Source: Mytilus edulis (lineage: Eukaryota). From it: a stretch of DNA of 64,000 nucleotides. A model generated the notes under the pieces. That model was not told the DNA's origin and did no database searches. It saw only the letters and a list, made by a program, of their open reading frames with translations. The stretch is from positions 18,290,001 through 18,354,000 of the forward strand of contig NC_092353.1 of the NCBI RefSeq assembly GCF_963676685.1. Direction: 5' to 3'. This document shows, piece by piece, positions 717 to 62,900 of this stretch (positions are counted from its first letter, which is position 1; each line of letters opens with the position of its first letter). A program made the position numbers and the translations under genes.

Positions 717-3700
717 GGTAACACGATACCGAATGACGTTACGCCATGAGTTATCGTTCCTGACGTTATCGAATTTAACGTTCACATATATAAGCCAATG
801 CAGCGGGTTTTGTGTGACATTTTTAACGGTAACTTTTTCTAGATGCAGAGTGCCGAGAGTTTTGATGCAATACGTAGCGGTTATTTGACATAGATTGTTT
901 TATCGTTTTCCGGCAATCATTCTGCTTATAGTTTTATCACTTTATTTTTATTCTTGGTATAGATATAGGAAGTTGTGGTGTGATTGCCAATGAGACAACT
1001 CTCCATCCAAATAACAATTTATAAAAGTAAACCTTGGTTTATTTTTGCAATAAGTACTTATTCATGATTCACGCCGTATCCCCATGAAATTGTGTTTTGA
1101 AAGTAGAAATCTAATTTATAGAAGCTTAGGATGATGTGTGAAAGAAACGGGGAATTTTACAACTATTAATTAGTTTTAAAATGGTCATCAAAAACACCGC
1201 TCGGACAAAATTGAAATTTATTTGGATGATAATACGGATATAATTAGGGGAAAAAGCACAATACAAGCAGACGTTGAAAATCATACAGAAAATAGTTAGT
1301 TTGTATGGAATGTAAAAAAGTGGTTATTTAGCCGAATAAATTTTCCTGTGTAAACAGTCTCTGAAATTCATTGGTCTGTACAGAGTAAATTCGATATAGT
1401 TTTGAAAATATTTTAAAATACAGTTCCAGCTTTGTAATAGTATAAACCAGATCTACTCAGGACGGACAGCAACATCGGAATGAAGCATTAGAAAGTTAAC
1501 GAAGGCCGAAAAATACATGGGCACTTGATTCGGCAGAAATAAAATAACAAAATTCAGGTTTCGTTACAGTCTGAATAAAGCCAGCCCCGAGTATCCACTT
1601 GTGTCTACAAACGCAAGTTGATAGTTGGTGCTGGCTGTAGTCAGACCGGTTCCGTGTTCCCTGATTCTGTTAAAAAACAATTCTCGAAATTTACATGCAA
1701 ACGACTGACTTTTTATTATTCAAACGGCAAGAGACTGTAAAAAAGCTAGATCTTGAAATCATTTACATTTTATATTCGTGTTAATTTACGCTTGCATGGG
1801 TATTCGGTGGGTTTTTTTTTTAGTTTTGAGTTGGAAATAATGTACATGTACAAGTTGGGAGACAAAACGACTGAAAGAAAATTAACAAACTTACCTTTTA
1901 GGGCTCTGAGGGCCATAATGCTCGCATACTAGGCGTCGGAAAAGGTCCGGAAAGTTTCTTTCTTAAAATTAGTTTTTAGAACAAGTATACAAGTATATAT
2001 ATACATGTATAGCGTCAGTTAAAATTTTCCCGACCATCATCGCGGATGTCCTGCTTCTATTGCAAAACCTACCTATTGTATTTATAGATAACTTGTCCTC
2101 GTCCTGAACATGCATGAAATATTTTCCACTAGACGTTAACCAACTAATAATCAAAGCAATCAATTTACAATTTACACCCGTCACTTGGAACTTTATTTGT
2201 TAAAATTTTAATCATTGCCTCATTTCAAAAAATTCGACAAAGTTTAAACGCAGACAGCGGGGAAGACCAAAATTGAACAGTTACGCAAAACTAAATATCT
2301 ACGTTACCGCTTGCTCATTATGGAAGTGGGGTAACATGAGACTTTATTTGTAAAAGTACAAGTACAAACAAAAACAAAAAATGTGTTCATGTTATTTGTA
2401 CAAAAGTTAGCTGATAGAATGATAAATGGAGATATGTGATGTGCAATTTATAAGATAGCAACAGCCGGGTATTAATTAAACGACATCAACACCTTGAAGA
2501 CATCAAGAAAATCGTGACTAATGCTAATTGGAATAGTATCTTTACACTTCTTATTTGTAGTTTTAGTAAACGTTGGAAAATTTTGAGTATGTGTAGTATA
2601 ATTGTCGCAGTAACATTTCAGTCTCTTGGTAAATATAAGTTTAAGTCTTAAAATTTTTGCTCTTCTCTAGAAAATTCAAACCATAATGAAATATAAGGAG
2701 ATGCGGTAAAATTTCCAATTAATCAACTTTCCACCAAAGACGAAATGACGGAAATGCTAGCCTTCTTACATTGCTACTACATTTCAGATCTCCAAATTAT
2801 CATTCCATTATTTAAATTGCATATTCAAAAATATGCATTGTCACCAAATAACTTATAGAGCACGTGTTATCATATTGTTTAAAATTTGTCCGTTCGACCA
2901 TTAATCCCGCACTTAGTATATATAGGGTTAATTAGGCTAATTATTTAGGACTACAGTTGTTTTGCTTCAGCTTTAAAACTATGTACCTGGTGTTACTACT
3001 CATATTATAGGTGCGCATATCGTCTGAATTTTATTTTTTGTTTCATGACAGGTTGCTGGATTAGGCATTTTGATAAAATACAAAGGCAGTGCAGACTCCG
3101 GCTTACATCTGATACAGGTTGAATTTCAAGCTGGAACTTTTAAATTTCGAAGTTGTTTTACTTATATAAATATATGATCTCAAGCTTTGTTATGTAAATA
3201 ATTTTTCACAATGACAGAATGTTGAAATTTGTGAAATTTTGCATACAGTTTGCTAACCCGAATAATTCAGTCCCTCCCCGTAATCAATCTCTCCTACTTA
3301 CTTAATGTAGTAAGCGGAATATAACGACTGAATTATTCGGGTTAACAATTTGCAAGGTTTCTCCGACTTGCTGAGCAAACAAGTAACACATTTACACCAC
3401 GCAGAATACACTATACTACATTTCGTCATTTGATAAGGGATTTTTTCGTTTTGAATTATTTTTGGAGTTTTGTTATTTTATTTTTTGGAATGTGTATTTT
3501 ATCAGGATCATTATTTTTCCTCATAATTTTCACAAAAAACAGAATGTTTAATCTTTTTTGACTGATGCATCAAATGTGTCTTTTATAAACAACTGTTTTC
3601 AAAATTGTATTGTATCGTCCCGAACATGCATGAACTATTTGCCACTGAACGTTAAACAACCATCAAACCGAGCAATTAAAAAACTGTTAAATGAATCAAA

Positions 3701-4633
3701 TTTTTTAAAATACTATATTTCTGCATCGCGGGATGCAGTGATGATACCACCATTGTCTAATATGATGGAGTTAAAAATCAGTAATTCGGATGAATCTCAC
3801 GTGAAATGTTTCATTTAATTTTCACGTAAACTTAACAAAAATCTGAAGGTATTTTTTATGGTTTTAATCAAATTTTAGAACAAAGATATTATTTTAATAA
3901 TTTTATTTCAAATATTTACGTGAATTTAACGTGTACAAAATTCCGATGATTTATGCATGAACTCTTATCATAAGATTCACATGGAACATGTTCACGCAAG
4001 TTTCAAGTATATGCTCGTTTAATGTGAAAATCAGACGATATTAATATTAATTCATATGAGTGAAATGCCATGTGCAGGACGAAATAAAATTATATCTGAT
4101 TCAGTAGAATTTTATATTGCATTACTAGGAACTTTACGACAGTCGACAGGGGAAATGAAAATAAAATATACTCATTCAGATCCCGACACATATTTTTTCT
4201 CTCCATTTCTCTGAGAAGGAATAACGTTATATTCCGTACACCATAACGTCACACGTTTTTGGTCAAATTCTAGGCCTATCAATCAAATTTGAAGCCATTT
4301 ATTTCAAAAACAAGGATGGTGACATATGAGTTTCTATACGTGTATGGATTCACTATGCAATCCTGGATATTATGTTAGTTTTTTGTTTTTCTCCGTATAT
4401 AAGAAAATAGCCATCCATTCGAAAATCTAAAAAGGTAAGCCGAAAAAAAGGCATTTCCCCTATATACCTAAGTAAATTTGTCGCCAAAATTGACGTTTTC
4501 CTATGAAAATCACAAAAAAACAAAAATGGTGACCCCAATTTTTTATTACATATTCCGATGTAACTCGATTCAAAGTACACGTATGCCAAAAATTTTGGAA
4601 ATCGGGAGATATGCCATTCGGTATCGTGTTACC
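717..4633. mobile_element. Non-autonomous DNA transposon, Kolobok-like (copy 1, 3917 bp)
   Basis: Perfect 19-bp TIR GGTAACACGATACCGAATG at 717 and its reverse complement ending at 4633. TTAA on both sides (713-716, 4634-4637). GG termini plus a TTAA TSD fit Kolobok rather than piggyBac. A colinear second copy lies at 34489-38310. No transposase ORF seen. Confidence 0.85.
3256..3342. mobile_element. 87-bp micro-MITE with TA flanks nested in the Kolobok-like element
   Basis: TAACCCGAATAATTCAGTC ... GACTGAATTATTCGGGTTA inverted repeat with TA on both sides. Absent at the equivalent site (~37110-37125) of the second copy. Confidence 0.7.
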
Positions 4634-7289
4634 TTAATTCTATAGAAATATAATACATGTAGGATAATCAAGTTGTTGTAAATATAGAGACTAAGCTAAT
4701 GACAATCCTCATACCAAAATTCATGATAAACCACAAGTTTCCGTTCCCTTAGTATTGCTAAACTTTTTTTTATGGATTGTAATGTTCATTTGATTCGATA
4801 TGCTCCTGTTGCCAATTGCGACACTCTCGTCCTAAACATTCACGAACATTTACCACTGGACGTTAAGCAACTAACAATCAATCGATCAACTGCGTAACAG
4901 ATTTTAATGACTGTATGTTTTACCCGTCACTTTGTCCCACACAATATAATTGAAAACAATATGATATATTATAGTTTTATATACAACAGAAAAAAATTAC
5001 AATATGAACATTTTGTTTATGAAAGGACAACGTAATTATAACTATCTAGAGGTAACAATAAAGTTTTCAGTTTCCAACTTTCACAAAAAAAAACCCAACC
5101 ACATCGAATTGTAATCGGCCGGACTAAACTGATGTTGTATTTTTTAAGCAAATGAATGAAATCATGCAATGAAAAAAATGTCAATATCTTGAATTTTATA
5201 ACCTGTTTAATAATGTCCTACACGATTTAATGATCAAATACATATTTATTTAATAATAAGAATGTGCGAGACGTATAAAACCTACCATTCTACTTTGTTA
5301 AATCTGCATTCGTGAATAGTTTGAAAGTGTGCTCCTGACGTGCAATTCCCCAAATATAAATATGCTGAAGAGAGAAGAGGTGACCGAAGACTGAAAGAAT
5401 AGACAGTTTAAAAGAACAGAAACATTTTTACACCAATTTTGATCAAAATAAAATTGAGAATGGAAATGGGGTACAACCCAACCAAAGAACAGAGGCCCAC
5501 GGATTAATAATAAGATATGCTGTGGTATGATTGCCAATGAGACAACTCTCCACAAGAGACCAACATGAACGAAATGAACAACTATCTATCTATCTATATA
5601 TTTATATATATCTAAAGTCTATAATATCTTAAAATCAATATCTTAAAATCAACTGTTTGCTGACCAAAAGGGTTTGTAAGATACAATTTGAAAAAGACTG
5701 TGATTGGTAAATGTGTAAGCTTTACTTAGTCTGAGTCTGCGACTTCTTTGTGCAAATTTAATCTTGAACTGTTTCAGTAATTTCATTACCTCGGATGTCT
5801 CCATGCAGTAATTGATATATATTTCAATTTCGAAGGATTTCCTATTTATCCGGTGTTAATATTTGTAAATTCAAAAGGACAAAGTTTCAAAAAAAAGTCA
5901 AAAAGTAAAATAAAAATCGAACTATTTAAGTCTTATTATAGTGCACCGTGCACCTAAAAAACTTTTAAACGAAAATCAAACTATTACCAAATACAAATAC
6001 ATTTGTCATACAATTTTAGTTTTATTATGTTTTAAATGCATTTTGAAACGTTATGAAAATTTAGCCTTTGGTTGTTGGCTTATTATCAAGTAATTTTGGA
6101 TTTTAATGGCGTTTTGAATCTGCACACCTGATCATTGAAATAACATTATTTGATTTGTTGAAAGAATTTGGCATTATTATTTTAAAATCATAAGCAATAA
6201 CATTTTCTTATGCATAATATACTTAATGATTATTATAAACGTGAATTGAATATTGATAAAGAATGTGAAATAATTCAATTTTGATTACATTCATGAGTTC
6301 AGGTACAAAATTTAAATCCAATAATGTATTGAATAAAAATCTAATTTGGTTACATAAAATTATCAAATTGAATTTGAAGAATTGAAAAAAGATATTGCAA
6401 AATGAATTATTAAATTCTGCATTGAAATCTCGTCAATTTTAAACCGTTGCATCATGGTAATTTGATGCACCACGCATTCAGTATTGTGACTGACATCTGC
6501 ATGCAGAAAAAAATGCAACGCTTTGTTAATTTTTCCTGTACACAGTCAACGTTTTTAATGTTAAGAAATCAAGAATGTGTAAAAGTACCATACGATATCC
6601 CATTTTTCATTATTTTGTTGAAATGTGATAAAAGGCCCATTTGCTAATAAAGCGTAATAAATTTTTTTAGAAAACAATCGTTTAAAAGATTCTCAAGTGC
6701 ATGGGTATTCAAAACACTCAACGTTTAAAATTATCTGCTTAAAATTTTATCTGTAGATTAAAATTTGAATGAAATTGTTCTGAAACAGTTTTAAAGTTGT
6801 CAGTTTTTCTGCATGTTTGGCACACAGACTTTCTAATGCGATAACAGTGTACTTTATGACAAAGACAGACAATTCGCTATAATAGTACAACAAAGACAGA
6901 CTGTCTAATGCTGTGGCAGTATGTCAGTTGTTTGGCACACACACACTTGCTCATGTGATGAAGTATACGGTTCGGCACATACATACCTTCTTGTGCGATG
7001 AAAGTATACAGTATGGCAAAGAAGGATTTTTTTATGCAATAGCAATAAAAGGTGTACCACAGACGGACTAACTTATCAACTGACAGTATACTGCAGAAAA
7101 CAGGCAGGCATTATAAAATGTCAGTGTGCTTTATAACGGTCACAGGCACATACATACTTTCTGCTGCGATAACAGTTTACTATATGGACTGGACTGGCTT
7201 TTTAAGGATGACATTATGTTGTAGGACACGGATTGACTTTTTTATACGATGACAAAGACAGACATTATTCTATGTTAGTTCAATGTTAA

Positions 7290-31000: not shown

Positions 31001-34000
31001 TCTCATAATGAATCTAATTGTGTTTGGTTTTTTTTATTTGAAAGAGTGAGACATTGTTGGCCTATTATTATTTTATTATTTTGATACGTACCAATTTCAC
31101 ATCTAAGACCACCATATGGGTTGGGACAGTAACACTTGTATCCCGTAGTTTCATCTAAACAAACGCCTTGATGGACACAGGGTTTCTTTGTGCAATATAT
31201 TATTCCTAAGTAAGAAAGAATAAAATGTCAAGATATGGTTGTTTTTTATTTGTTATTTAATGTACTTATATCAGGAATCAAAGTTCGATCAGTCTGTTTT
31301 CAAAAAAGCATATTTTGGAAAGCATGTCTTGGAAAAAATGAAGTAGTTCAGAACAAAAATGCACCGAAAAATGAAATATGCTTACCACGGGTAACAATTT
31401 TGAATACACTATCAGCAAAATGACCATGTATATCTGTAGCTCTAATTGTTATTGTGTAAGTGGCGTCAGAATCCGGAATCAGTCCATGTATTCGACCGGA
31501 ATCAGGTTCTAGTTTTACCCCAGGTGGTAACATTCCGGCTACAATAGCATACACAATCGGTTGTCCTTCCGGATCCTACAACGACATAATGTTAACTAAA
31601 CTCACATTAATATATAGTTTTCTTATGAGACAACACAATTTTTTTTAATCTGATACATAATTTTGTACTTTGGAATTTAATGGTTCTTTAGGTAATTTTA
31701 TTGGAGTGCAAAAGCGTGGACCGAAGCACATTTTTTATGTAGCCCGGAAAAATCTATAAGTTTTCGACCTGACAATTCTAATAATAACATTTATATGCTA
31801 TGATAATGAATTTATGAGAGAAAATCAAGTTTTAAAATTTCATTTGTTCTCCTGTGCAGTGTTATCACGATGTCATGATAATCACTTATGCTCCGTTTAA
31901 TAAGATTTTCAAATAGATATAAGAAGATGTGGTATTTATTGCCAATGAGACAACTCTCCATCCAAATCACAATTTGTAAAAGAAAAACAATTAAACGCTA
32001 AAGTACGGTATTGAATACAAAGCACTAGCTCACACCGAACAGCAAGCTATAATAAAGGGTCCCACAATGACTAGTGTTAAACCAATGAAACTGGAAAACC
32101 AACAGTCTAATCTATATACAAACGAGAAACTTTTAAGAACAACATCAACAAACGACAACTACTGAACATCAGATTCCAAACTTAGAACAGGTGCAAACAA
32201 ATGCACCGGGGTTAAACGTTTTAATAGGTAACATTCTTCACCCTTACCCAGCCAATAGTATAATATAGGAAGACACACTATAAAATGTCAATTGAAATGG
32301 CTGAACTCAATCAAAAGGCATAGTAACACAAGTGCACATACATTGAACGGAAACATTTGATCTATGAGACAATATAAATACAAAAACAAATTAAATAAGT
32401 TTTGAATAAATAAAGACAACAGTAGTATACCGCTGTGAGATGTTGAATAATTTCAGAAAGTCAACCATAAAGGCTCGAATATATGTCTACAGATTAATGA
32501 TCTTTAAAAGTGTAAAACATGCCGCCATGTAGTTTCAGAGGATACGATTTTTAAAATTGACGTACTGCTTCTGGCTTTAATTCTTTTATCGGATCAGAAC
32601 CAAATGTCAAACATTTGAATGAGACCTTTTATACAATTCTATTTTTTATTTTGCATGCATTGCCTATTTATTGGTTAAATGTTTTAGCCTTTCAATGACA
32701 CAGTCTTCAGTGTTCCTATAATATATGATTGAAAATAAGAGTTGTAACACATACCATTTAAAAAATGCATTTACATAATTTATACCTTAGCTATGACGTT
32801 TACATCTATTTTGTCTCCTGCGTGAAATTCTCCAATATATCCAAACGTAGAATGTTCTTCCCAGATAGGAGGTTGACTCAGAATCAGCTGAAATGAATTG
32901 AAATCAATTTGGGCCAATAATGAGAGCTTGGTATAGGGTATAACCAACTGCTCGCATCGTTTTCACACCTCTGTCTGACCCACAATTGATTTTTTTCCAT
33001 TTGTTCACTCATATTTGCTTTTTGTTTCTCAGTAAACACACAAGCCTAATCTTGCAAAAATAAATGTATTTGTTTGTGTTACACAATTATTAAAATGCAA
33101 CCAACTTCACAATACTTCGTTATTATATTAAAATTTTGTCTTTGGCAATTCATAATTTTACTATAACAATTGCCAAAGACAAAATTTTAATATAACAATT
33201 GTCAAAGACAAAATTGTAATATAACACTTTCAAAAAACCAAAATGTGTTCTTGCTTATTTTTTATACAACCAAACACTTCAAAAAAATACATTTAAAATA
33301 TAGCTAATATTTTAATTGTATATTGTTAGTTTTTTTAACGTTTTATTTGTTTATGTTTAAAGTATCAAACTAAGGGGTAACAAAACTTGATGTTCGTATC
33401 TGACAAACGTGCAATGTATCGGCAGTTGTGAGTGGTCATTCTCTTATCATTTGAGTTGTCTAGCTTTCCCCCTTGAGGTAAGTTCAGCTGTACAGTTTAC
33501 TGGCATTTAAATAAGTATTCGTCTTTTTTCTAGTAGAGGAAGACAATTAGGATGTTCTTTCTCCATCATTCCTTTACAAGTTATAACTCAGTCAAAGGTG
33601 ACCTAAGATGCATTTGGCCATTATTTGAAGTTCCTTTTTATATAGCTCTGTAACTGTTTCGGTCTTTATGCATGCTTGTCTTTCAAATATTCAATATTTA
33701 GATGGATTCATGACAAAATTGTGTTTTGGTGATGGTGATGTGTTTGTAGATCTTACTTTACTGAACATTCTTGCTACTTACAATTTTCTCTATCTATAAT
33801 AAACTTGGCCCTTTAGTTACAGAGGAAAATATTTTGTGAAAAATTTACATAATTTACCAAATATTAATGAAAACTGTTAAAAACTGACTTTAAAGGGCAA
33901 TAACTCCTTAAGGGGTCAACTGACCATTTTGGTCATGTTGACTTATTTGTTGATCTTACTTCAGGGCAGATAAAGATTGACTTGATAAATAATTTAACCC

Positions 34001-40902: not shown

Positions 40903-42414
40903 CTTTGAATCAATTCTTCGTTAGATGAGCGTAATTTTTGAAGGGAGGAACTTCAGTTGTCTGTCAAGGTATGCTGCCGGCCTCTTCGACCTTGTTGAAG
41001 AAAATATAAGTACGAAGTTACGGACCTACGACCTGAAACCAAGATAGAGATATATTCATAATTATGTTTCTCGGATAATATGAATTTTAATCCATTTATT
41101 AAGTTTTGATGATGATAAATATTACATGTGTTTGTTTTAGTTGCTTTGAAGTTAAGGTTATAAACAAGTTGGAAACTCTTTGTTTCTAGGTGGAAATGAA
41201 CTTTGGATTAATGAACTAGGAAGTAGCCGTATCTTTCTGTAGGAGGCAAACACATCTTGATGACCTCGCTTTCAGCTCAGTTTTTCATAATATATCATGT
41301 CATTGTGTACAATGACCAAAATCATTTTTATGTTGTCAAGATTTTAAAAACATTTCAGGTAAATATTTTTTTTTGAAAAACAAGAAATTAAAAATGTAAA
41401 AACTAATTCTGTAAAACTATTTCTAGAAATTTTGCTTTGATTTTCACTTTAAAATTAGCGAGTTTTGTACTGTTTGCTAATTAGATACATGTAGATAGAG
41501 CGAGAGAGAAATAATCAGATAAGGATTTGCATGTTTGGTCAAGAATTTCAAATCTGTTTGCAATGTGCAGTTGTATATCATTATAAACCTTTGCCTACAA
41601 AATCCCCCCTTTTTTAAAAATAAACCAACTCTATATCGTATGTGGTTGGGAGAAACACTCAGCTCCTTTAGCCGGATTTGCATAATGGTGTGACGATCTT
41701 CAAATAATTTGTTTAAACAAGCCACGACATAAAATTTACTGTCGATTTGCAAAGATTTTTCGTCAACGAAAGATGAATGCAATAATAGTTTTAATATTTA
41801 TCAAACTAGCGAATCAGTGAAATGTTTGGTCTATAAAACGTCCATGTGTACCTCAGCTTTGTATGTGTGTTGTTGACATTTAAAGCACTGTTAAGTTCAC
41901 TCATAGTTTCTTAATCAATTCATTATACAGAATGATACCATATAGGTTTTTGCTCTGAGGTTGTGAATTACTAAACCCGTACGTACGTGGCAGTTGCAGT
42001 AATGCTTAGGATTGCCAGTTTCCCTGATGGAGGGCGGTTGTTCTCTCCGGCACTGTTAAGTGATAAAAAGTGCCCGCCTCGATATAGCTGACAAAGAAAT
42101 GATTTTTAACAATCAGTAAATCAATCTATAAAATTTGGGTGACCTTTCATAATCTTATAATATAATTTTGATGCCTTTTATTATTGGGTTAATATTTTAT
42201 TTGTGCTCACTATATAGTCTTATTTGGTTGCTGCTAAAGTATTATTCACATCTTATCTAGGTTATTTCTGACTGGTCGTATTGAAACATTGGCTATATTT
42301 TTAGCTCAGTTGTGTTATCGTAATATACCATAGTTTAGTTTCCCAGATAAGAACAGTTTATGAATTACTGATATCTAAACGTTAGTTAAACATACATTGC
42401 CAAAATCACAAAAA
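40903..42414. promoter_or_regulatory. Divergent (head-to-head) intergenic region between paralogs A and B; candidate bidirectional promoter
   Basis: The ATGs of A (40902, -) and B (42415, +) are 1.5 kb apart and point away from each other. TSSs are not determined. Confidence 0.45.
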
Positions 42415-45400
42415 ATGGCTACCATCAGCGGTTTAATATTATCTGCATGCTTCTTGACAATTTATGCGAGGTAAGAACTTTTAAATAATATATCACAATA
42501 TTTAATAAAAACATTAACAAGACATACATAACATACAGATGCTTTTATATATACATTGATGGTAACTCGACAATTTCAAATTAAAACAATCTGAATTAGA
42601 TAATTTGTTTTAAAGTTAATATAGATTTCCATATGTGTGTACTTTTTTTCGAAATTTAGTTTCAATTGACATTTTTTATTTTCAAATCTAAGATTGCCTC
42701 AAGTTTTAACTGAGGTCCGCCTTGCTCATTCTATGTTGTGTTTTGAGTACTGTGTACTGTTGTTTGTTTGTGTTTTTTTTTGTACTTTTGTTTTTTTGCC
42801 ATTGCGTTGTTTTTTTCGACTTTTTTGTTTTTTGTTGTTGTTGAGCATGACTTTTTTTGTACTGCTTTAGTGTCATGCATAAATAACCCATATCATTTGT
42901 TTTTCTATTATGAGTTTGAATACCCCCTTGGTATCCTTGGCCTCTCTTTTTCTGTCATTTTTTTATTCAATGTTTATTCATTCATACCTTGCACTGTATT
43001 GTACATTTTTATTATTTATATATGTTGTTATTTGTTTTTGTTATAACATTTCATTCGTTTTATCTTCAAAAACTGAGTAAAAATTTCTGTTTACCCATTT
43101 TATTTTCAGTTTCTTTGACATACAGTACCCTAATGTGTACATAACAGCCGAAAATGGAGGCAATCTAACAATACAGGTAACTATGTTTCAAAATTTAACA
43201 CATATTCATTAAAAGTTTAGTAACTGCTTATCTTATATTACCAAAAAGATGCAGAACATGTCTCAGCAACATTTCATAGTTTTTAGCATATTGTCATATT
43301 GAAAAATTAAATTATTGATGGCTAAGGAATAAGGAGCAAACGTAAATACAAAAATAAAATGTAATAAGAGAGCGAACTGTCTTACCCGGCTTATTCTGTA
43401 TATGTTTCAGTTGGAAAAGGCATAGCTTCATGACAATAGAGCGGTAAAAAATATGCTATTGTTACAAATGTATGATATCTCATTCGCATACATGACAATC
43501 TTTTCTAATTTTGAAGGCAGGACCACAACAAGGCAACATCTTTATGAAGCCAAATGGAAATGGCACTGTTTACATTGGACATACAGATATGCTTAAGTTA
43601 TTTGAGGTATAGTAATTTAAAAAAATATAACACAAAAAAAAAACATAGGTTGCACATTGTCTTGTTAAATACTTAAATTTGTTTTTATGTTTATATTCTT
43701 TCAATTCTTCCAACCAGAAGCATATTTTAATTGATTAAACAAACATTAACACCTAACATTTTGGTATAATAAGCCTATATTATATCATGTCTGCGAATCA
43801 TGCAAAACTGATTTACATTTTCATACAGAATTGTGCAAAAAGTAAAATCACAAAAATACTGAACTCCGAGGAAAATTCAAAACGGGAAGCCTGGTCCCTT
43901 TGGTCCATGAGTCTTATTGCTTCGTTTATCATGTGAACCTAATTTAGACAAAAGCTTAGCCGTAGGTAGTTTAAACGTTTTTAATTTGAGTATGCGGAGG
44001 GCCACAACACATCGATTGTTGACCCTATTTGCAAGGGTTTTGTGAATTTACCAAAACTACAATTTGGTCCTACGAATGGACAACAACACCATTTCATGTC
44101 ATGTTAAAATGATATTTGTAACTATAACATAAATATTTTGAAAAATATTGCAATGCTTGTATTTATCTCATAATTATAATAGTTAACAAACTTACTATAT
44201 TTTGTGTTTGTAGATTGTTAACAGTTTACCACCGACATGGAAGGTTAACTCAGCACATGGCAGTCTTGGAGTGTTTGCTGGAGGACAGTCTGTCAACTTA
44301 TTGTTGGAGGCAATTGTAAGCATTGATCATTCCGTTCTATGGTGAAACAATTGAAGCATTTATTAGAGTGGTAATTGGATAAAGAGTCTTTTTTGTGAAT
44401 CATTGCTTTAATTCAGTTATAAAACTTGAACAGAAACATAAAATTATCTTTGTAAGTTGGGCATACATGCGTATACGGAGGGTATTAAGGAACAGAGAAA
44501 CATGAAAACAATCTTACCTAAAAATTAAAAATATATATTAATTGTTATCAGTAACACATTTTAAATATCTTAAGTTTCAATGTTTGAGTTCAAGTTATAT
44601 TTTACTATTTGGTCGCCTTATTACTATGTTTATCAATTCATTATCTTTGCAGGATCCCGAAGGTGGTAAAATGAGATTTGAGAAAGTATCTGGAGCTTTC
44701 CCTCCAGGTGTACACCTTGACAAGACTACAGGTCGACTAACCGGAAATGCACCGGACGTAGATGCTACGTACGAGTTTGGAATTCGTGTCACTGACGCTC
44801 ATGGCAAATATGCTGATCAGATCTTTTCAATCGACACAAGAGGTATACTGTTTTGATCATACGCGGGAAAATGCAATTTTGTGTCCCTTCTGTGTATAAT
44901 ATGTTTTATTTGCTTACGTAGTAATAGTATTTGGCTTTTTTAACTCGATATTCCCTACAGAATATGCAAAATGATGTCATAATCCTGTTTACTAATAAGA
45001 TTGTAGTAGAACATTTTAAACATAACTTTTCTCTAAGTTCATATTGTGCAATGTAGTGATGCGTCATTTTTGTTTTCGCGATATTTTAATATAAAAATAC
45101 ATTTTTTGACAAAGGGCATGTCGTTTAAAGACCCATTTTAGATTTTCCTTTGTTGATGATTACTTGATTACGTGTAATTTTTATACGAATGGTAACTTTT
45201 TGATGAAGTTATGATATGGCTGTTAAAGGAAATTATTCTTATGAACGCATTTAGAGTCTCTTTGAATTGCAAATTTAAAAATATGCGCTGAATGGGGTTC
45301 TACAAGTGTTCAACTCAATTCTGTATGATGCAAGTAAGAGGGCCGAATATTATTATATTTCCAGAGAAGAACCAGTGCAATAGTAATCCCTGTCAACACA

Positions 45401-47241
45401 ATGGTAAATGTGAGGATGCCATAGATGATTACAAGTGTAACTGTACAAATCCGTATGGTGGCTCATCGTGTCAGTTTGGTACGTATTATTTTAATATTTA
45501 TTTGTTGTCTAAAGACTATCAACTGTCAAAAACTTTCCAAAGAGTATGACCGAAATAAATGATTAAATCTCATAATTTAGTTTTACTATAGTGTATAATA
45601 ATTTACCAGCAGAGCTTCTACTATTTTTTCAATCTTTGTTATTCCATTTTTCAATCTTTTTTTGTTATTCTATTTTTATTCAATCTTGTTCTATTTTTCA
45701 ATCTTTATCATTCAATTTTTTCAACATATTTGTTATTCTATTTTTTTCAATCTATGTTATTCTATCTTATTTAATCTTTACTATTCTATCATTTTCAATC
45801 TTTATGATTCTATAATTTTCAATCTTTATGATTCTATTATTCTCAATCTTTGCTATTCTGTTATTCTCAATCTTTGATATTCATTTTTAAGCCAAATTTT
45901 ACATCGATTATTTTATTGTATTAATATTTTGTATACAGATTGTAGAAGCAAGGCTGTTGGTGTAGATAACAGTGTTAAGAGCATACCAGATGCCCAGCTG
46001 TCTTCCCATTACGCTTCTGGAGACCACCCTGCTTCTAATGGGAGGTTAAATAATCCACGTGGTTGGTCTGGTACAAGTACAAGCTCTTGGTTGCAGGCGA
46101 GTATAGTTAATTCATTATATATTTTGAAGATCGTACAACCATTTATCTTTCGTATATCTTGAAGTAAGAGACCTGAAATCCGAGAGGATTCACGTGTAGA
46201 TAATTGTAGTAACCTGAAAATGAAAGTTTGTTCATATTCATTTCATTTTAGTGATCTTAAGTGATCACTTGTTTCTCCATAACACTGTCGTTAAAATAAA
46301 AACTTTAAAAACATGTCAATAAAGTAAACACTTTTATAATTTATGACGATAAAAAAAAAACGGCGTCAAAACATGTCGATAATATAAATACTTTTAAATT
46401 TCAGGTTGACATTGGACACTCTACATCTGTTTATGCAGTAGCAACCCAAGGTCAGTCATCGTCAAGCTACATCAAGACATACAGGGTACAGTACAGTGTT
46501 GATGGAAATTCCTTTACCAACGTTGTCAATGGAACATCTGCAATGGTAAACATATTGCTTCTGTTATAACCCATAACACATACATTGCTGTTCAAGTTAA
46601 TGCATGTTCGGCCGACCTGGTAGTTTTAGTGATTTGAACAATAAAAGCCAATTGATTGTCGTAATGTGTAAATACACTTTCTTGTTGGATCTTTGATGAT
46701 ATTTAATTTGTAAAATGAAATTACTGTCCTTAGGTAAAGGAAGATGTGGTATAAGTGCCAATGAGGCAACTCTCCATCCAAGTCACAATTTATTAAAGTA
46801 AACCATTATAGGTCATTGTACGGTCTTCAAAACTGAGCTTTGGCTCAAACCGAATAGCAAGCTATAAAGGGACTCAAAAAATTACTGGTGTAAAACCATT
46901 TATATATAAAAAAAAAAAGAGAAACGGGAAACGCTTATGCACCACATCAACAAACGACAACTACTGAACATCAGATTCCTTATTTTTTTTAAATTAATAT
47001 TACCCTGTAAGAGGATGGATTATTCTTAATTGACTATCGGCAGCTTACACCATTTAAATACTTAACTATGTTTAGTATTTCTTTTTTACAGGAATTTACT
47101 GGCAGTAGCAGTGTAAACAGCGTAATAAAACATGCATTTCTCCAGCCGGTTACCGCCAGATATATCAGGTTCATACCAAGAACCTATCAAACCAAACCAG
47201 GAATGCGAGTGGAAGTGTACGGATGTGAAATTGTCAATTAA
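42415..47241 (+). CDS. Paralog B: secreted protein, cubilin-NTD-like segment + He_PIG-like Ig domain + EGF + F5/8 type C domain (355 aa, 9 exons)
   Basis: Exons 42415-42470 (MATISGLILSACFLTIYA), 43110-43176 (FFDIQYPNVYITAENGGNLTIQ), 43517-43606 (AGPQQGNIFMKPNGNGTVYIGHTDMLKLFE), 44214-44315, 44653-44842 (DPEGGKMRFEKVSGAFPPGVHLDKTTGRLTG..), 45365-45478 (EGF CNSNPCQHNGKCEDAIDDYKCNCTNPYGGSSC), 45939-46096, 46405-46545 (VDIG..VATQG), 47092-47241 (..TARYIRFIP..MRVEVYGC). 1068 nt. Intron 7 is GC-AG. AATAAA at 47267. Confidence 0.9.
45620..45880. repeat. Degenerate ~21-22 bp T-rich tandem repeat (TTTTCAATCTTTATGATTCTAT) in intron 6 of paralog B
   Basis: About 12 visible units. It produces the spurious F/S/I-rich ORFs 45591-45877. 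Confidence 0.8.
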
Positions 47242-47989
47242 CAGTTTATGTTGAATTTGTTTAATTAATAAAATATTAGCCTTTAGTTGTCACATCTTAA
47301 ACATAGTTTATTCCTGAAACTGATAGAATAAGTGAATAATTTGACGAAAAAACAAAAACAAACTAATTTACCACTAAACATTTAATTAGGCTTTCAACTT
47401 ATAAGAAATGCATTGCATTAAAAATACATTTAGAGCAGGTGAACTTTTACTTTAGTTATGTGAGTTATGGGATTCATTTTTCCAGTGTGAAATATTTACA
47501 CTAAATTAATTCTTAAAAGGTAATTTTGATAGCTATTCTGTTATAAAATATCTAACAAAAAAAGAACAGAAATTCTCTTCACGGAGCATGATGCACAGCA
47601 ACAAACTACCACCTCTGAATAACATGCTTCTGACTATGGACAGGCACACACAGAAGGTGTCACTGTTAAACATGTTAGCGGCGTATAAAACCTCCCCTAA
47701 CATGGAACAGTTGTGTTACGCAACAGTACAGCACAAGAACAGACTATCGAATCAGTTGAAAAGAACTCAACTCATTAAGCTATACCAATGCAAAAATAAA
47801 AAGCCAAGAAAAAGACAAAACAAACCAAGACACAAGACACAAAGTACTTCTAAGAGTACTCTCAGCTATTGAAAACTATTTCAAAGCCAGTTACAACTTA
47901 AGAAAACTTGCTTGTGTCTAAGACTAAAAGGTTATGATAATGTCCCCGGGGACAATACATTTGTTGTAATAGAAGGGCCACATTTGAGG

Positions 47990-51806: not shown

Positions 51807-53517
51807 ATGAATATAACTAGCTAGTGTATGCAAAACATGCAGAAATAATATTTTATCAAAGGCTACCACAATTTTGTGCTATATATGAAGAGTTTGAAAA
51901 TTTGTTTAGACATTTGACTTTTGTTATAGACAGTCGACTCCTAATAATATATATAACGAAAACATTTACAACATTCCCCCAAAAAATAAGAAACACAAAA
52001 ATTAGACGGTACGACAGATCAACACAGCTACAAATCGCCTTATCTTCACAACGAAAAATATGGCCTCACCGATAGTTTCCATTTTGAAAACTGCATCTTC
52101 AAACCTTCCCCGAGATCCAGTAGCACGAATAGTAAAGCTATACTGCGCATCAACGTCTGGTGCTATGCCATATATCCTACTTCGATCTGATTCAAGATGT
52201 ATTCCTGGAGGGAAATCTCCAGCGACAAGGCTAAATTTTATGCTTCCTCCAGATGGTTCCTTAAAAAAAATAATCATAGTTTATATGGCATAGTTATACA
52301 AATAAAAGTTTAAAACATTACATACTTATTATATGAGTGTGTGTGTACGATTTGTTTACATTACAAATATGTGACAATAAATATTCACAACTCCATTTAT
52401 TTACTGTGTTATTTGAAAAATTTCACATTAGAAACAAAAGGATGAAGTAAAATTCTTACCTTAACTTTCAACGGTATATCAACCTCTCTGCCGCCTTCAT
52501 ACGTTCCAACAAAACCTACATGTGAATGGTTTATCCAAATCGGTGGTAAACTGTACACGATCTGAAATTATAGTAAATGGGAAATTAGTAATTCATAGTA
52601 ATTGTATTTCAATGTTAAAGAAACGTTCAAGAATGCGACAAATTATTCGAATTAGATCTTTAATTGCGTTATCTACATAAATTAAATTTTCTCGACATTA
52701 CTACAAATTAAGTTGCAGTAAAAAAAATTATATTATCTAGAATTAAGGGTTAATACGCGAACTTTGCAACAATGTTTGAGTGATAACGTTTTTCACCAAT
52801 ATATAAAGAAAATGAAAAAATAAAATAAAATCTGCCATTGAATCATTTAATAGAATCTCCATAGTATGATATTGACACATCGATTAGATCCCTGCACAAA
52901 CCTTAACTATCTCTAATAAATCGATGCCTTCAAAATAAGCTGTCCCTGTGCCATTTCCTGGATTGATGTGGATATCTCCATTTAGTCCGGACTGAAATTA
53001 CAAAATCAGAGGTTTTGCTTACACTAATAATCAAACACATTGAAATATTAATTAACCTTACTGTATGAATTTTGCGCAGAAACTATTTTGAATAATGACG
53101 TCAAGCTACAAATCCAGAAAGTATCTATGTAGCAATATAAAGTTTAAATTCACTATTTTCCCTAAAATTATCAGAGTATAGTATTTACCTCAGCTGTTAA
53201 ATTTCCCTTTTCTTGTGCAGCTACTGTTATACTTGGATAGTTCATTTGCAACACCCTAAAATCAAAAGATAATCAATAAGTATATCAAAGAGAAAAATTG
53301 AATTCATATTAAAAGTTTTACACATATAATTTTAACATTTACTTTACTTTACTACATTACATATCATATTTAGCATTCGAAAGTCGATTCGGTAATATTA
53401 AGATCTTTATTCCAAATTCTGTTAAAGTGATTGGTATAAAAAATTTACTCACTCTCCTTTAGATCCCGTAGTTATCCATATTTGTTGTAGAAAAACGAAA
53501 ATCAAACACAAAATCAT
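50132..53517 (-). CDS. Paralog C: secreted protein, cubilin-NTD-like segment + He_PIG-like Ig domain + EGF + F5/8 type C domain (357 aa, 9 exons)
   Basis: Exons 53517-53453 (MILCLIFVFLQQIWITTGSKG), 53255-53189 (VLQMNYPSITVAAQEKGNLTAE), 52991-52902 (SGLNGDIHINPGNGTGTAYFEGIDLLEIVK), 52561-52460, 52259-52070, 51755-51636 (EGF CQYEPCHNGALCNETNVGKGYECVCADFYGGKDC), 51339-51172, 50824-50694, 50272-50132 (..TARFVRFHP..PCMKVELYGCIL*). All GT-AG, 1074 nt. AATAAA at 50054-50049. Confidence 0.9.
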
Positions 53518-59900: not shown

Positions 59901-62900
59901 GAACTTCCATTTTGAACACAGAATCAGCATATTTCGTTTGATTGTTGATGGCTCTAATAGTAAATGTGTAGAAACGTTCAATGTCAGGAACTACACCATT
60001 TATAAAGCCACCCGTTTCATCAAGAGTCACACCAGTTGGCAAGTCTCCACCCACCAATTTGTATTCTAATGGTCCATTTTCAGGATCCTGCAAATAAACA
60101 AAAGTCGTTAAAAATAAAATATGTATACAACTATTTTACCATAAACTTCTGTAATCCACCAAATGATTTACCATCATGTGCTGTGGAGTTAAAAATCCCT
60201 AAGATCTTTTTTAATTGAATAGGGGCTAATAAAATGTAAAAGAATGCATTTGAAGAATATTTAAATATATAGACAATACTTACTCTTGCCTCTAATTTAA
60301 CATGGATTCGCTGTCCGCCATTAAATGTTCCAAAGAATCCGTTGTGTGCATGAGGTAGCCACACTGGAGGTAATGTTTTTGCCATCTGTTCAACATGTAA
60401 TACAAAGAAAACACAATTTAATGGCGTAAATGGTATAACGGATTATACTATATCTATTTAATTTATAACCTGTGAGTATCATCTTTGTTTATATTGTAAA
60501 GGAGTTACTCGAATACAACGTGACAAGCTGTTCACTGACTGTAGCTTATGCAATCAAACAGAGTTGAACATCATTCTAAGATGATAACTTTAGTCATCAA
60601 GGGTTTTATCAAGTTTCTACGATTGAAAACTGACATCATTATTATTCGGTGTGAGCCAAGGCTCCGTGTTGAAGACCGTACATTGACCTATAATGGTTTA
60701 ATTTTATGAATTGTTATTTGGATGGAGAGTTGTCTCATAGGCTTTCATACCACATCTTCCTATATCTATCATTTCCAACGCCTCGTGCCTCATATAGGGT
60801 GAGTACATTCATATGGGTCTATGTGAACTTGTAACAAATGGTTCAAGCGGCCATAAACGACAAAGTGTAAGGCACAATGCCATAACTTGTTCAACATTCT
60901 CTCATATTTCAGTGGCAGTAGAGTGTCTCGCCTTCTAACGCGACCTTCTTTGCGGAATAGACCTTTTGTAGTAATTGATAATTGTACACATTATTTCAAT
61001 ATGCATGACATATTTGACAGTGATCGTTAACTGAAAAATAAATCAACTACCTTTTTTTCAATCAAAGAGGATTTTTGTTACCTTAATGATCTCCAAAATG
61101 TCTTCTCCATCAAATATAACTTTCCCGCCTGGTCCAGGCTCCAGATATAAATCTCTTGCAAGCCCAGACTACAATGTAAGTGCATATTAATTATCAAACT
61201 AATTTTTATACTCTTTGTTTATAATAATTGACACAAGATACATGAACAGTTTGCAGAAATCATTGGTTTAAATGTACAGTACAATTTTACTCAAATGTTG
61301 TATGCTATGCAACGATTGTTATTAATCGTTCTAAAACAAGGCTTTTTTTCTTAAATTTGATTCGTACACATCCAACTGATAATTAGAAATTAGTTGCTGG
61401 AAATAAGTGATATCTTTTGCACTTTATTTGCAATAGTTTATATGTTTAAACGGACAAGAAAACAAAGTAACTGCTATTAAGGTACCATTGTTGTAAATCA
61501 AGTTTTAGGTTGGGTTCGTGTTGCTCAGTCGTTATTCTTCTATGTTGGGTAGTAAACTGGTGTTTGCCATTGATTCGTTTTTTGCCTCTGCATTGTCAGT
61601 TTATTTCCGACCTATAAGTTTGAATGTCCCTATGGTATGTTTCGTTGTCAGTTTGTTTTAGATTTATGAGTTTGACTGTCCCTTTGGTATCTTTCGTCCC
61701 CCTTTTTTTCGCCTCTCTTATATAAAAAGCTATCAATGAGTGTATTTTTCTGTGGTTAAACTCCCATACTTAGATTTTTGAATATTTTATAAATATTTTT
61801 TTGCATTTGGCTCATTTATTTCTTTCCATTTTAAATCTAAAGGATATAGCGGAAACACTATTGCTCCCTTTCAAATAAAAAATCTTTTACCTGGAGCGTA
61901 ATGTTTCCTGTATTCTGTGCCTTTACTGTCAAATGTGGTACATTTATATCTAACACCCTAAAATATAAAAATACGATTAACTGTAGTTATACTTATTCTT
62001 CTTTTTGATGTTAAGCTTGGTTTTGCTGGGTAGAGGGTATATTATCCACCATCCATAATTTATAATATCAACCATATACAAGTACATATAAACACTTAAC
62101 AGGATCTGCTTACCCTTCCGGAGCACCTGAGATCACCCCTATTTTTTGTGTTCGTGTTGCCTTTTCTTTAGTTGTCTATGTTGTGTCATGTGTTCTATTG
62201 TTTTTCTGTTTGTCTATTTATCTTCTTTCATTTTAAGCCAGGCGTTGTCAGTTTACTTTCGATTTATGAGATTGACTATCCCTTTGGTATCTTTCGTCCC
62301 TCTTTTAACTATATACACGTGCATTGGAAAGTAAAGAGTTAAAATGTGTATGAGCAACTTGTAACATAGTCACATATACTCAAAATATGCAGTTTAAAGC
62401 AAAAAGGCAGATGTTTAGATTTAAACGACTGACATAGACAAACACAGATTGTGACAAAACCAGTTTAAATTCGATAGCGAAATGTACTCTTAAAGGCTTT
62501 TTCCCTCAAATTTGATTCGTACACATCAAACTGATAATTAGAAGTTAGTTGCTGGAAATAAGTGATGTCTTTTGGACTTTATTTGCAACTGTTTATATGT
62601 TTAGGGTTAATCCTGTCATCTTATTACTTTAAAAATTGTGTGCTCGAAACACTAGTCATTAGGTACATTTGTACGTTCATAAAAAAGATTGAAATCCAAG
62701 TATGTAAAAATTCTGAAATAATCGACGGCAATTTCAATAAAATGGACACAAAATAACAAATACATCCTAAGTCAACTTTGCCCGAGAGAATGGATCTAAA
62801 GTTTCTTTCAATTTTATTCTACATTTCAACAGAGAATTTAATAAATGTATGTATTAATCATTTTAGTATCAAAGCAATTACTACTGGGCTGAATATATCA

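What the first reader, a model, noticed from the sequence alone, without database searches (positions are those of the whole stretch)
44214..44842. Ig-like domain looks prokaryotic/phage-type (He_PIG-like), yet is split by conserved spliceosomal introns: candidate domesticated horizontal transfer
Seen: exons 4+5 encode LPPTWKVNSAHGSLGVFAGGQSVNLLLEAIDPEGGKMRFEKVSGAFPPGVHLDKTTGRLTGNAPDVDATYEFGIRVTDAHGKYADQIFSIDTR, with equivalents in A, C and D. The pattern P.W....GSLG.....A.DPEG....SG.LP.G..L...TG.I.G....TY.F.IRATD....D..FSI is what I associate with 'putative Ig' (He_PIG/dystroglycan-type cadherin-like) repeats of bacterial surface proteins and marine phage virion proteins. It is rare in animals. 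The preceding GNI...PNG.G.V motif also recalls phage fibre repeats. Inference: a phage/bacterial fibre module fused to animal EGF and F5/8C exons at a phase-1 intron (exon shuffling). An ancient dystroglycan-like origin is the alternative.
Basis: inference. Interest (0 to 1): 0.8.

Follow-up and report, generated by a model that had tools for sequence, protein, structure and literature searches.

The report
Phage-type Ig domain in mollusc genes
Five neighbouring, expressed mollusc genes carry an adhesion-type domain whose closest visible relatives are in marine bacteria and their viruses rather than in the animal's own proteins, so it may be an old gene transfer, but this could not be checked against other animals.

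Summary
Window 44214-44315 and 44653-44842 are two real exons of a nine-exon, about 355-codon gene. Spliced RNA contigs from 4 of 4 runs show the GT..AG joint between them.

Exon 5 alone passes Pfam He_PIG (35.9 bits, cut-off 24). Exon 4 matches the N-terminal third of the same domain type.

The phase-0 intron inside the domain sits at the same place in all five paralogues (four in the window, one just outside) and in 5 of 5 contigs from other species.

The domain is of the prokaryote/phage type:
- It is 41-58% identical to domains of giant uninterrupted ORFs and of a Pelagibacter phage tail-region protein, the same range as those domains share with each other.
- This genome's own dystroglycan scores 10.8 bits against the family profile.
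- Three whole-genome searches found canonical copies only in this cluster.

No close donor was found, exon composition is host-like, and the tree gives no firm sister.

No metazoan-wide search was possible. An old horizontal transfer is therefore the leading reading but is unproven. The 'phage fibre' reading of the preceding motif found no support.

The parts
42415..42470 (+). Gene B exon 1: start codon and an 18-residue hydrophobic signal-like peptide; ends in phase 2
   Evidence: Sequence; joint 42470->43110 in RNA contigs of 3 of 4 runs. The signal-peptide reading is by eye; no predictor was run.
43110..43176 (+). Gene B exon 2 (N-terminal stalk, first part)
   Evidence: Joints; 0 PHROGs families.
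43517..43606 (+).
   Evidence: Joints; 0 PHROGs families; z 2.0 against phage gp039, aligned to its Gly-rich tail.
44214..44315 (+). Gene B exon 4: N-terminal third of the He_PIG domain (34 codons, phase 0 at both ends)
   Evidence: It lines up colinearly with the residues just ahead of the exon-5 match in phage and giant-ORF domains. Against a profile of those N-terminal thirds, 8 of 10 exon-4 peptides from the five paralogues and five other-species contigs beat all 1000 shuffles; B itself scores 9.0 bits against a best shuffle of 6.3.
44316..44652 (+). Phase-0 GT..AG intron (337 bases) inside the He_PIG domain
   Evidence: The joint is seen in 4 of 4 runs. The intron is at the same place in all five paralogues and in 5 of 5 other-species contigs. 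G+C is 0.28.
44653..44842 (+). Gene B exon 5: C-terminal two thirds of the He_PIG domain (63 codons plus 1 base, ends in phase 1)
   Evidence: Pfam He_PIG 35.9 bits. Folded alone with a 25-row alignment: mean pLDDT 88.3, all beta. z 15.1 against phage gp039.
45365..45478 (+). Gene B exon 6: EGF module, phase 1-1
   Evidence: Pfam EGF 31.7 bits, cut-off 21.5; joints.
45939..47241 (+). Gene B exons 7-9 (45939-46096, 46405-46545, 47092-47241 including the stop): one discoidin (F5/8C) domain. Intron 7 is GC..AG.
   Evidence: Joints; sequence. The last exon scores F5_F8_type_C 22.7 bits, below the 28.2 cut-off, as it is only a third of the domain. Exon 8's best PDB matches are neuropilin, CASPR2 and factor VIII at E 0.01-0.07. 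Exon 7 has no PDB match at E<=1.
31387..32890 (-). Copy A: He_PIG exon pair (exon 5 at 31387-31576; exon 4 about 32786-32887) with a 1210-base intron between
   Evidence: Exon 5 is 50-51% identical to B. Pfam scores 27 bits in the genome search. The 5' edge of exon 4 was not settled.
52073..52561 (-). Copy C: He_PIG exon pair with a 200-base intron
   Evidence: 47% identical to B. 33 bits with the prokaryote-only profile. Not listed by the Pfam model in the genome search.
59901..60385 (-). Copy D: He_PIG exon pair with a 196-base intron
   Evidence: 40-41% identical to B. Pfam 25.2 bits.

Best explanation
What it is (shown). This is a tandem cluster of five expressed genes for secreted proteins of about 355 residues. 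Each has a signal peptide, a short N-terminal stalk and one canonical He_PIG (cadherin-like Ig) domain encoded by two exons. One EGF module and one C-terminal discoidin domain follow.

Origin (inferred). The He_PIG module most likely entered an ancestor of these molluscs from a marine bacterium or phage. This happened before the five-fold duplication and before the sampled species diverged. It became the body of a gene that also holds animal-type EGF and discoidin exons. It later gained a phase-0 intron, and its composition drifted to that of the host.

Function (inferred from what the domain types do elsewhere). The discoidin domain is the sugar- or lipid-binding head. The He_PIG domain is a rigid, possibly calcium-stiffened spacer or second adhesive surface. 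Together they would make a secreted multivalent binding protein of mucus, matrix or immune recognition.
For: Real and expressed: spliced contigs in 4 of 4 runs.

Host-integrated: all five copies have GT..AG introns. The neighbouring exons are EGF and discoidin.

Prokaryote/phage type:
- With the family profile, family members not used to build it score 94-119 bits. The best domain in 150 giant uninterrupted ORFs scores 50.5, phage 48.4 and GTDB genomes 40.5. This genome's dystroglycan IG1 scores 10.8, its cadherin repeat 1.2 and a third Ig-like exon 3.2.
- Copy E is 33/60 identical to Pelagibacter phage HTVC200P gp039 and to giant ORF P0019. The paralogues share 41-62% with each other.
- The likeness continues colinearly through exon 4.

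Confined in this genome: the Pfam model, a profile of 17 bacterial/archaeal segments and the giant ORF P0039 each found canonical matches only in the cluster. The next hit to the prokaryote profile scored 18.6 bits.

Old: each paralogue groups with fragments from other species, and the exon order and intron place are kept in 5 of 5 other-species contigs.

Direction: 18,733 cluster representatives match at E<=0.001. The Pfam family is found in 5 of 14 control prokaryote genomes, against five genes here.

Precedent: a paper on co-option of phage lysozyme genes by bivalves (PMC5303276; only the search listing and the start of the abstract were seen).
Against: - No donor. The best whole-exon identities to prokaryotes and phages are 41-58%. 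That is the same as unrelated prokaryotic He_PIG domains share (median 43%, 90th percentile 52%), so identity dates nothing.
- The hits are spread over Halobacteria, Acidobacteriota, Actinomycetota, Planctomycetota and Pseudomonadota.
- The IMG/VR scan found none, and the JGI metagenome scan found only family members.
- The sister relation to giant ORFs P0019/P0021 has only 86/80 support. The non-mollusc rows were picked for likeness to the mollusc profile.
- Third-position G+C of the He_PIG exons (0.38, 0.32) equals that of the other exons (0.33-0.44).
- Other animals could not be searched. The one HMMER job returned only multi-repeat giants.
- The own-genome searches are stated lower bounds.
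- The giant ORFs carry no names or taxa. Calling them prokaryotic rests on their being single ORFs of 1308-3524 residues made of He_PIG plus Laminin_G_3 or subtilase domains.
Confidence: 0.5

Rival explanations
1. Vertical inheritance. A canonical He_PIG domain belongs to an old animal (or older eukaryotic) stock of extracellular modules. It is kept in this family, and perhaps in other invertebrates that these tools could not see. It stays close to the family consensus because the fold tolerates little change, so no transfer is needed.
For: - He_PIG-like domains exist in an ancient animal gene of this same genome. The large dystroglycan exon matches He_PIG at 20.7 bits over half a domain. Dystroglycan with two Ig-like domains is reported from sponges onward (PMC4582122; abstract and passages read).
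- Identity among He_PIG domains plateaus at 40-55% even between archaea and bacteria, so closeness to prokaryotes need not mean recency.
- The intron, host-like composition, five-fold duplication and multi-species spread all fit an old resident.
Against: - This genome's other He_PIG-like domains are far more diverged: 1-11 bits against the family profile, while prokaryote and phage domains score 40-50.
- No second canonical copy from which the module could have been shuffled was found.
- The word search with five diverse paralogues found only tight family members: 30 of 36 candidates, all 67 bits or more, with nothing in between.
- In the tree the stem of the mollusc clade (0.23) is short compared with the paths between paralogues (about 1.4).
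Confidence: 0.38
2. Dystroglycan or sarcoglycan origin. On this reading the domain is a copy of the dystroglycan-type cadherin-like domain that was shuffled into a new gene.
For: Both match the same Pfam model. The dystroglycan IG1 domain is also split by an intron, about 6 residues from the equivalent place.
Against: Dystroglycan IG1 scores 10.8 bits with the family profile. It did not appear among the 9 matches to the prokaryote profile that finds all five cluster genes. The intron places differ. The genes here have no DAG1 or a_DG1_N2 domain.
Confidence: 0.05
3. Artefact. The stretch would be bacterial or phage contamination, or a chance open frame.
For: None found.
Against: There are spliced transcripts and GT..AG introns in five copies. 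The host is AT-rich and there are no assembly gaps in the window. The same exon order is found in other species' contigs.
Confidence: 0.01

Closest known systems
He_PIG repeats of giant marine surface-protein ORFs (P0019, P0021, P0022, P0039, P0060) and of Pelagibacter phage HTVC200P gp039 (MH598801.1)
   Same: The same Pfam family and the same sub-type over the whole domain. The shared motifs run from an N-terminal P-x-W...G-x-L-G through D-P-x-G to the final A-D-x-x-F-S-I. Identity is 45-58% over about 60 residues. gp039 lies in the phage's tail-region gene block.
   Different: In those proteins the domain is encoded without interruption. It comes in arrays of 8-14 with Laminin_G_3 or subtilase domains, or once in a tail-fibre-like protein with a Gly-rich tail. 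Here there is one copy per protein, split by an intron, next to EGF and discoidin. The giant ORFs have no taxon on record.
Dystroglycan IG1/IG2 (dystroglycan-type cadherin-like, SMART CADG) domains
   Same: An animal extracellular Ig-like domain that touches the same Pfam model. It is also interrupted by an intron.
   Different: It is very distant in sequence, 10.8 bits with the family profile, sits in a different protein context, and the intron is at a different place. That CADG also covers sarcoglycans and yeast Axl2 is recalled, not tested here.
EGF-discoidin secreted proteins (EDIL3/Del-1, MFGE8/lactadherin)
   Same: A secreted protein with an EGF module followed by a C-terminal discoidin domain. 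Exon 8's best PDB matches are animal discoidins.
   Different: Those proteins have two or three EGF modules and two discoidin domains, with no He_PIG and no stalk (recalled). Here there is one of each, after a stalk and a He_PIG domain.
Phage lysozyme genes co-opted by bivalves (PMC5303276)
   Same: A published case of phage-to-bivalve transfer followed by domestication (search listing and start of abstract only).
   Different: That case is a whole enzyme gene. Here it would be a single binding module built into a mosaic animal gene.

Membership tests
Pfam He_PIG (PF05345) | Score above the curated 24-bit cut-off | tested here: met
   Exon 5 of B alone scores 35.9 bits. In the genome search E scores 45.8, B 36.2, A 27 and D 25.2. 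Copy C was not listed by the Pfam model, but scores 33 bits with a prokaryote-only profile.
Pfam He_PIG (PF05345) | Homology over the whole ~95-residue domain, N-terminal third included | tested here: met
   Exon 4 gives no Pfam match on its own. It aligns colinearly with the N-terminal third in phage and giant-ORF domains. 8 of 10 exon-4 peptides beat 1000 of 1000 shuffles against a profile of 11 such thirds; D4 and L058 did not.
Pfam He_PIG (PF05345) | Cadherin-like / Ig-like beta-sandwich fold | tested here: inconclusive
   Only exon 5 could be folded, since the joined domain was left out by rule. The model has pLDDT 88.3 and is all beta. Foldseek gave 0 matches at E<=0.001. The best were Rib Long (2.7e-3), SraP, the N-terminal domain of a Bacteroides alpha-galactosidase, and animal cadherins.
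Dystroglycan family | DAG1 (PF05454) and a_DG1_N2 domains; close likeness of the Ig-like domain | tested here: not met
   No such domain was found in the gene B peptides scanned in Pfam: exons 4 and 5 and three open frames over the EGF and discoidin exons. The genome's real dystroglycan lies on another contig. Its IG1 scores 10.8 bits with the family profile.
SMART CADG (dystroglycan-type cadherin-like) | Match to the SMART model SM00736 | not testable with these tools
   No SMART library is on hand.
Horizontally acquired gene or module | Integrated in the host genome, expressed, and not contamination | tested here: met
Horizontally acquired gene or module | Nearest relatives lie outside animals | tested here: inconclusive
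   Prokaryote and phage domains score 40-50 bits, against 1-11 for this genome's other Ig-like domains. No proteome of another animal could be searched.
Horizontally acquired gene or module | Nested with support inside a donor clade | tested here: inconclusive
   The mollusc rows form one clade (99/91). Their sister, P0019/P0021, has only 86/80 support, on 62 columns, and the rows were chosen by likeness.
Horizontally acquired gene or module | Absent from related lineages (patchy distribution) | not testable with these tools
Horizontally acquired gene or module | Foreign base composition | tested here: not met
   Third-position G+C is 0.38 and 0.32 in the He_PIG exons and 0.33-0.44 in the other exons. 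This is expected if the event is old.
EGF-discoidin proteins (EDIL3/MFGE8 type) | EGF module(s) followed by F5/8C domain(s) | tested here: met
   EGF scores 31.7 bits. The F5/8C domain is spread over three exons: the last scores 22.7 bits, below the cut-off on its own, and exon 8 matches neuropilin, CASPR2 and factor VIII weakly. The number of domains differs from the vertebrate proteins (recalled).

The most novel reading that the evidence does not exclude
A glycan-adhesive He_PIG module of the kind marine phages carry on their tail fibres was captured by a filter-feeding mollusc. It was welded to animal EGF and discoidin exons and split by a newly gained intron, then amplified into five genes. 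The host would now use a phage's own surface-binding domain in secreted, possibly trimeric, mucus or immune lectins. That would be a domain-level phage-to-animal transfer with a datable intron gain.
Probability: 0.2. Interest if true: 0.8.

Novelty: new variant of a known kind. Interest (0 to 1): 0.55.

Why it matters
If the module was transferred, this would be a clean case of domain-level (not whole-gene) transfer from bacteria or phages into an animal. The module was built into a mosaic gene by exon shuffling and then gained an intron. Its position can be read against uninterrupted prokaryotic homologues, so the intron gain could be dated across species.

If it is vertical, it shows that a near-consensus He_PIG domain has persisted in an animal lineage. 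It would also give a new domain order: stalk, He_PIG, EGF, discoidin.

Either way, the family is a candidate secreted binding protein of molluscs that no paper found in the searches made here describes.

Tried and rejected
- The single HMMER search of 1.84 billion representatives, run with a profile of four exon-5 peptides, ranks by summed score. It returned only proteins of 877-7396 residues with 9-58 repeats.
- The two cluster look-ups gave no names or taxa.
- PDB sequence searches with exon 5 and with the profile gave nothing under E 0.07.
- The ESM Atlas gave He_PIG clusters labelled viral or bacterial at 0.88-0.91. I gave this no weight for origin, as the tool itself warns.
- PHROGs gave 0 families for exons 2-5.
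- Paper searches for He_PIG, PF05345, IPR008009, IPR006644 and the dystroglycan-type name found bacterial, phage, protist and fungal mentions and one tick dystroglycan. None concerned an animal He_PIG-EGF-discoidin protein (passages). Supplementary tables were not opened and may list such domains.
- Rejected: a shared intron with dystroglycan, because the places differ by about 6 residues.
- Rejected: a transfer of He_PIG plus discoidin together from a phage. The Melnitz phage protein has F5/8C, but its He_PIG-like stretch matches only at E 0.1 and Pfam does not call it. Exon 8 looks like animal discoidins.
- Rejected: the C8 'He_PIG' hit, which is an ordinary cadherin repeat.
- Tree rows left out: 13 of 23 GTDB segments (under 45 profile positions), 120 of 150 giant ORFs (only the 30 best with over 50 positions were kept), and about 15 family fragments.
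- For the exon-4 profile, only 11 of 150 giant ORFs met the rule that the match starts at profile position 3 or earlier.
Full report
**1. The observation**

RNA contigs from four public runs were laid on 42300-47300. One run is on record as RNA; the other three are only guessed to be RNA. They show the joint 44315->44653 with GT..AG ends in 4 of 4 runs. One contig of 1206 bases crosses every joint of the gene.

Together with the sequence this fixes gene B as nine exons:
- exon 1: 42415-42470
- exon 2: 43110-43176
- exon 3: 43517-43606
- exon 4: 44214-44315
- exon 5: 44653-44842
- exon 6: 45365-45478
- exon 7: 45939-46096
- exon 8: 46405-46545
- exon 9: 47092-47241

That is 1068 bases, or 355 codons plus the stop. 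The intron inside the domain is phase 0. Exon 5 ends in phase 1, and the EGF exon is phase 1-1. Intron 7 is GC..AG.

**2. Domain identity**

Exon 5 alone matches Pfam He_PIG at E 1e-8 and 35.9 bits, above the 24-bit cut-off, over profile positions 35-94 of 96. Exon 4 alone matches nothing. The next exon is an EGF module (31.7 bits). The last exon is the end of an F5/8C domain (22.7 bits, below the cut-off on its own).

Exon 5 folded alone with a 25-row family alignment gives an all-beta model with mean pLDDT 88.3. Foldseek against the PDB gives no match at E<=0.001. The best matches are Rib Long, SraP, the N-terminal domain of a Bacteroides alpha-galactosidase and animal cadherins. This fits the cadherin-like Ig superfamily but cannot separate bacterial from animal members. 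No search or fold of the whole domain or the spliced protein was made.

**3. Copies and conservation**

The window holds four copies of the exon pair: A and C and D on the minus strand, B on the plus strand. A fifth copy, E, lies about 4.5 kb past the window's end.

All five have a GT after exon 4 and an AG before exon 5 at the same codon. All five exon 5s have 63 codons plus one base. The intron lengths are 1210, 337, 200, 196 and 524 bases. Exon-5 peptides of the paralogues are 41-62% identical.

The word-indexed protein search found only short genomic ORF fragments of the same family:
- 12 of 12 candidates
- 7 of 7
- 30 of 36, all at 67 bits or more

They come from JGI, ENA and Logan assemblies, carry no names, and show the same exon ends.

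A scan of JGI metagenome contigs found 39 pattern matches, of which 5 encode relatives. All five are AT-rich eukaryote-like contigs (0.35-0.38 G+C). They carry exon 3, exon 4, an intron of roughly 80 to 890 bases, exon 5 and, where the contig reaches, the EGF and three discoidin exons in the same order.

In a tree, each paralogue groups with fragments from other species. The duplication and the intron therefore predate those species.

**4. Is the domain of the prokaryote/phage type?**

Yes, by several tests.

(a) tblastn against 50,697 phage records found 12 records. The best is Pelagibacter phage HTVC200P at 43.5% over 60 residues, E 5e-7. The match lies in gp039, a protein in the tail-region gene block. 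It has one He_PIG domain (45.3 bits) followed by a Gly-rich tail.

(b) A scan of one genome for each of 185,579 bacterial and archaeal species found 197 pattern matches, of which 23 were confirmed. Identities are 31-62%, the higher values on partial segments. The hits fall in many phyla.

(c) Against the family profile, the scores are:
- family members not used to build it: 94-119 bits
- best single domain in the 150 giant ORFs returned by the HMMER job: 50.5
- phage: 48.4
- GTDB segments: 40.5
- this genome's dystroglycan IG1: 10.8
- a Big_9-like exon on contig 14: 3.2
- a cadherin repeat: 1.2

(d) Copy E is 33/60 identical to gp039 and to giant ORF P0019.

(e) The likeness continues into exon 4. 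The residues just ahead of the exon-5 match in gp039 and in the giant ORFs carry the same P-x-W...G-x-L-G...hydrophobic-x-hydrophobic pattern. A profile of 11 such N-terminal thirds scores 8 of 10 exon-4 peptides above all 1000 shuffles. The scores are 19.9 to 7.3 bits against a best shuffle of 6.3; D4 and L058 fall below.

The intron therefore interrupts a domain that is continuous in its prokaryotic relatives. The giant ORFs are single uninterrupted frames of 1308-3524 residues made of 8-14 He_PIG repeats plus Laminin_G_3 or a subtilase. Their organisms are not on record.

**5. Is it rare in this animal?**

As far as the genome search can see, yes. The tool states that its counts are lower bounds.
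- The Pfam model at E<=10 found 7 matches among 9 candidates. Four were cluster copies; the others were a cadherin repeat, dystroglycan and one weak Ig-like exon.
- A profile made only of 17 bacterial and archaeal segments found the five cluster genes at 57.2-33 bits. Nothing else scored above 18.6 bits, among 17 candidates.
- Giant ORF P0039 found 4 matches among 7 candidates, all in the cluster.

**6. The dystroglycan alternative**

The genome's dystroglycan gene is on another contig. Its large exon begins inside the first Ig-like domain and matches He_PIG at 20.7 bits over profile positions 44-96. An old animal gene therefore does touch this Pfam family. Dystroglycan with two Ig-like domains is reported from sponges onward (PMC4582122; abstract and passages read).

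But it is far from the cluster's domain, and its intron lies about 6 residues from the equivalent place. A dystroglycan origin is unlikely.

**7. What stops short of proving transfer**

- The identities to prokaryote and phage domains (median 39%, maximum 58%) equal the background among those domains themselves (median 43%, 90th percentile 52%). An archaeal segment is 34-63% identical to the bacterial ones. Identity is therefore at a plateau and dates nothing.
- The mollusc rows form one clade (99/91) on a short stem (0.23). The sister group has only 86/80 support on 62 columns, and the outside rows were chosen for likeness to the query.
- IMG/VR gave no confirmed hit.
- Third-position G+C of the He_PIG exons is the same as in the other exons.
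- Above all, no search of other animals' proteins was possible. Organism names are coded.

**8. The 'phage fibre' motif**

Exons 2 and 3 gave no PHROGs family. They show no significant likeness to gp039 (z 0.7 and 2.0, the latter aligned to its Gly-rich tail). I did not test that.

**9. Reading**

Shown: there are five expressed tandem genes for small secreted proteins with the order stalk, He_PIG, EGF, discoidin. The He_PIG domain is a full member of the prokaryote/phage sequence cloud, is split by a conserved phase-0 intron, and was found in this genome only in the cluster.

Inferred: the module was probably acquired from a marine bacterium or phage before the family expanded, and gained its intron afterwards. 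I put this at about 0.5, against about 0.38 for an old animal module kept near consensus.

Function is inferred from the domain types only: a secreted, perhaps oligomeric, binding protein with a discoidin head and a He_PIG spacer or second adhesive surface.

A published case of phage lysozyme genes co-opted by bivalves shows that the route exists (PMC5303276; only the listing and the start of the abstract were seen).

Noticed in passing
window 46097-46404: Intron 7 of gene B uses a GC..AG splice pair (exon ends ...TTGCAG, intron starts GCGAGT). The joint is seen in contigs of 4 of 4 runs, reported with a 4-base ambiguity.
   Followed up: partly
window 43803-43969 and 46642-46975: Two intronic stretches have contig depths in the thousands to tens of thousands in all four runs, with many loose ends. 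They look like copies of abundant, transcribed interspersed repeats.
   Followed up: no
window 45590-45880: Intron 6 of gene B holds a run of imperfect short repeats (units like ttctattttcaatctt). It opens long spurious ORFs.
   Followed up: no
L034 (G000:C10:18354001-18364000), about 2193-5144: A fifth family member (E) lies on the plus strand just past the window's end. It has the same exon 3, 4, 5 and EGF order. Its exon 5 is the copy closest to the phage and giant-ORF domains (33/60).
   Followed up: partly
L031 (G000:C1:22058488-22062336): This is the genome's dystroglycan gene. One open frame of 816 codons holds a_DG1_N2 and DAG1. It starts inside the first Ig-like domain, which is therefore also split by an intron.
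   Followed up: partly
L032 (G000:C3:57572-61129): A second, weaker DAG1-like open frame (40.4 bits, 307 codons) may be a dystroglycan-related or sarcoglycan-like gene.
   Followed up: no
L039 1474-1779 (G000:C14:61518029-61518334): A single exon encodes a whole Ig-like domain with weak Big_9, Big_13 and He_PIG matches (E 1.6e-4 to 6.8e-4) and an A-x-D-P-E motif like the one at the cluster's intron site. The gene it belongs to was not identified.
   Followed up: no
L043 1927-3960 (Methylophilales phage Melnitz-2, MZ577096.1): A phage protein next to the terminase genes carries an F5/8C domain (38.4 bits). About 30 residues downstream is a stretch that matches the mollusc exon 5 weakly (36.9% identity, E 0.1). 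Both domain types of the mollusc genes would then co-occur in one phage protein, but the He_PIG part is not called by Pfam.
   Followed up: partly
P0175 (151 aa, ENA): In a related species the intron between exon 5 and the EGF exon is short and open in frame, so a gene caller read straight through it.
   Followed up: no
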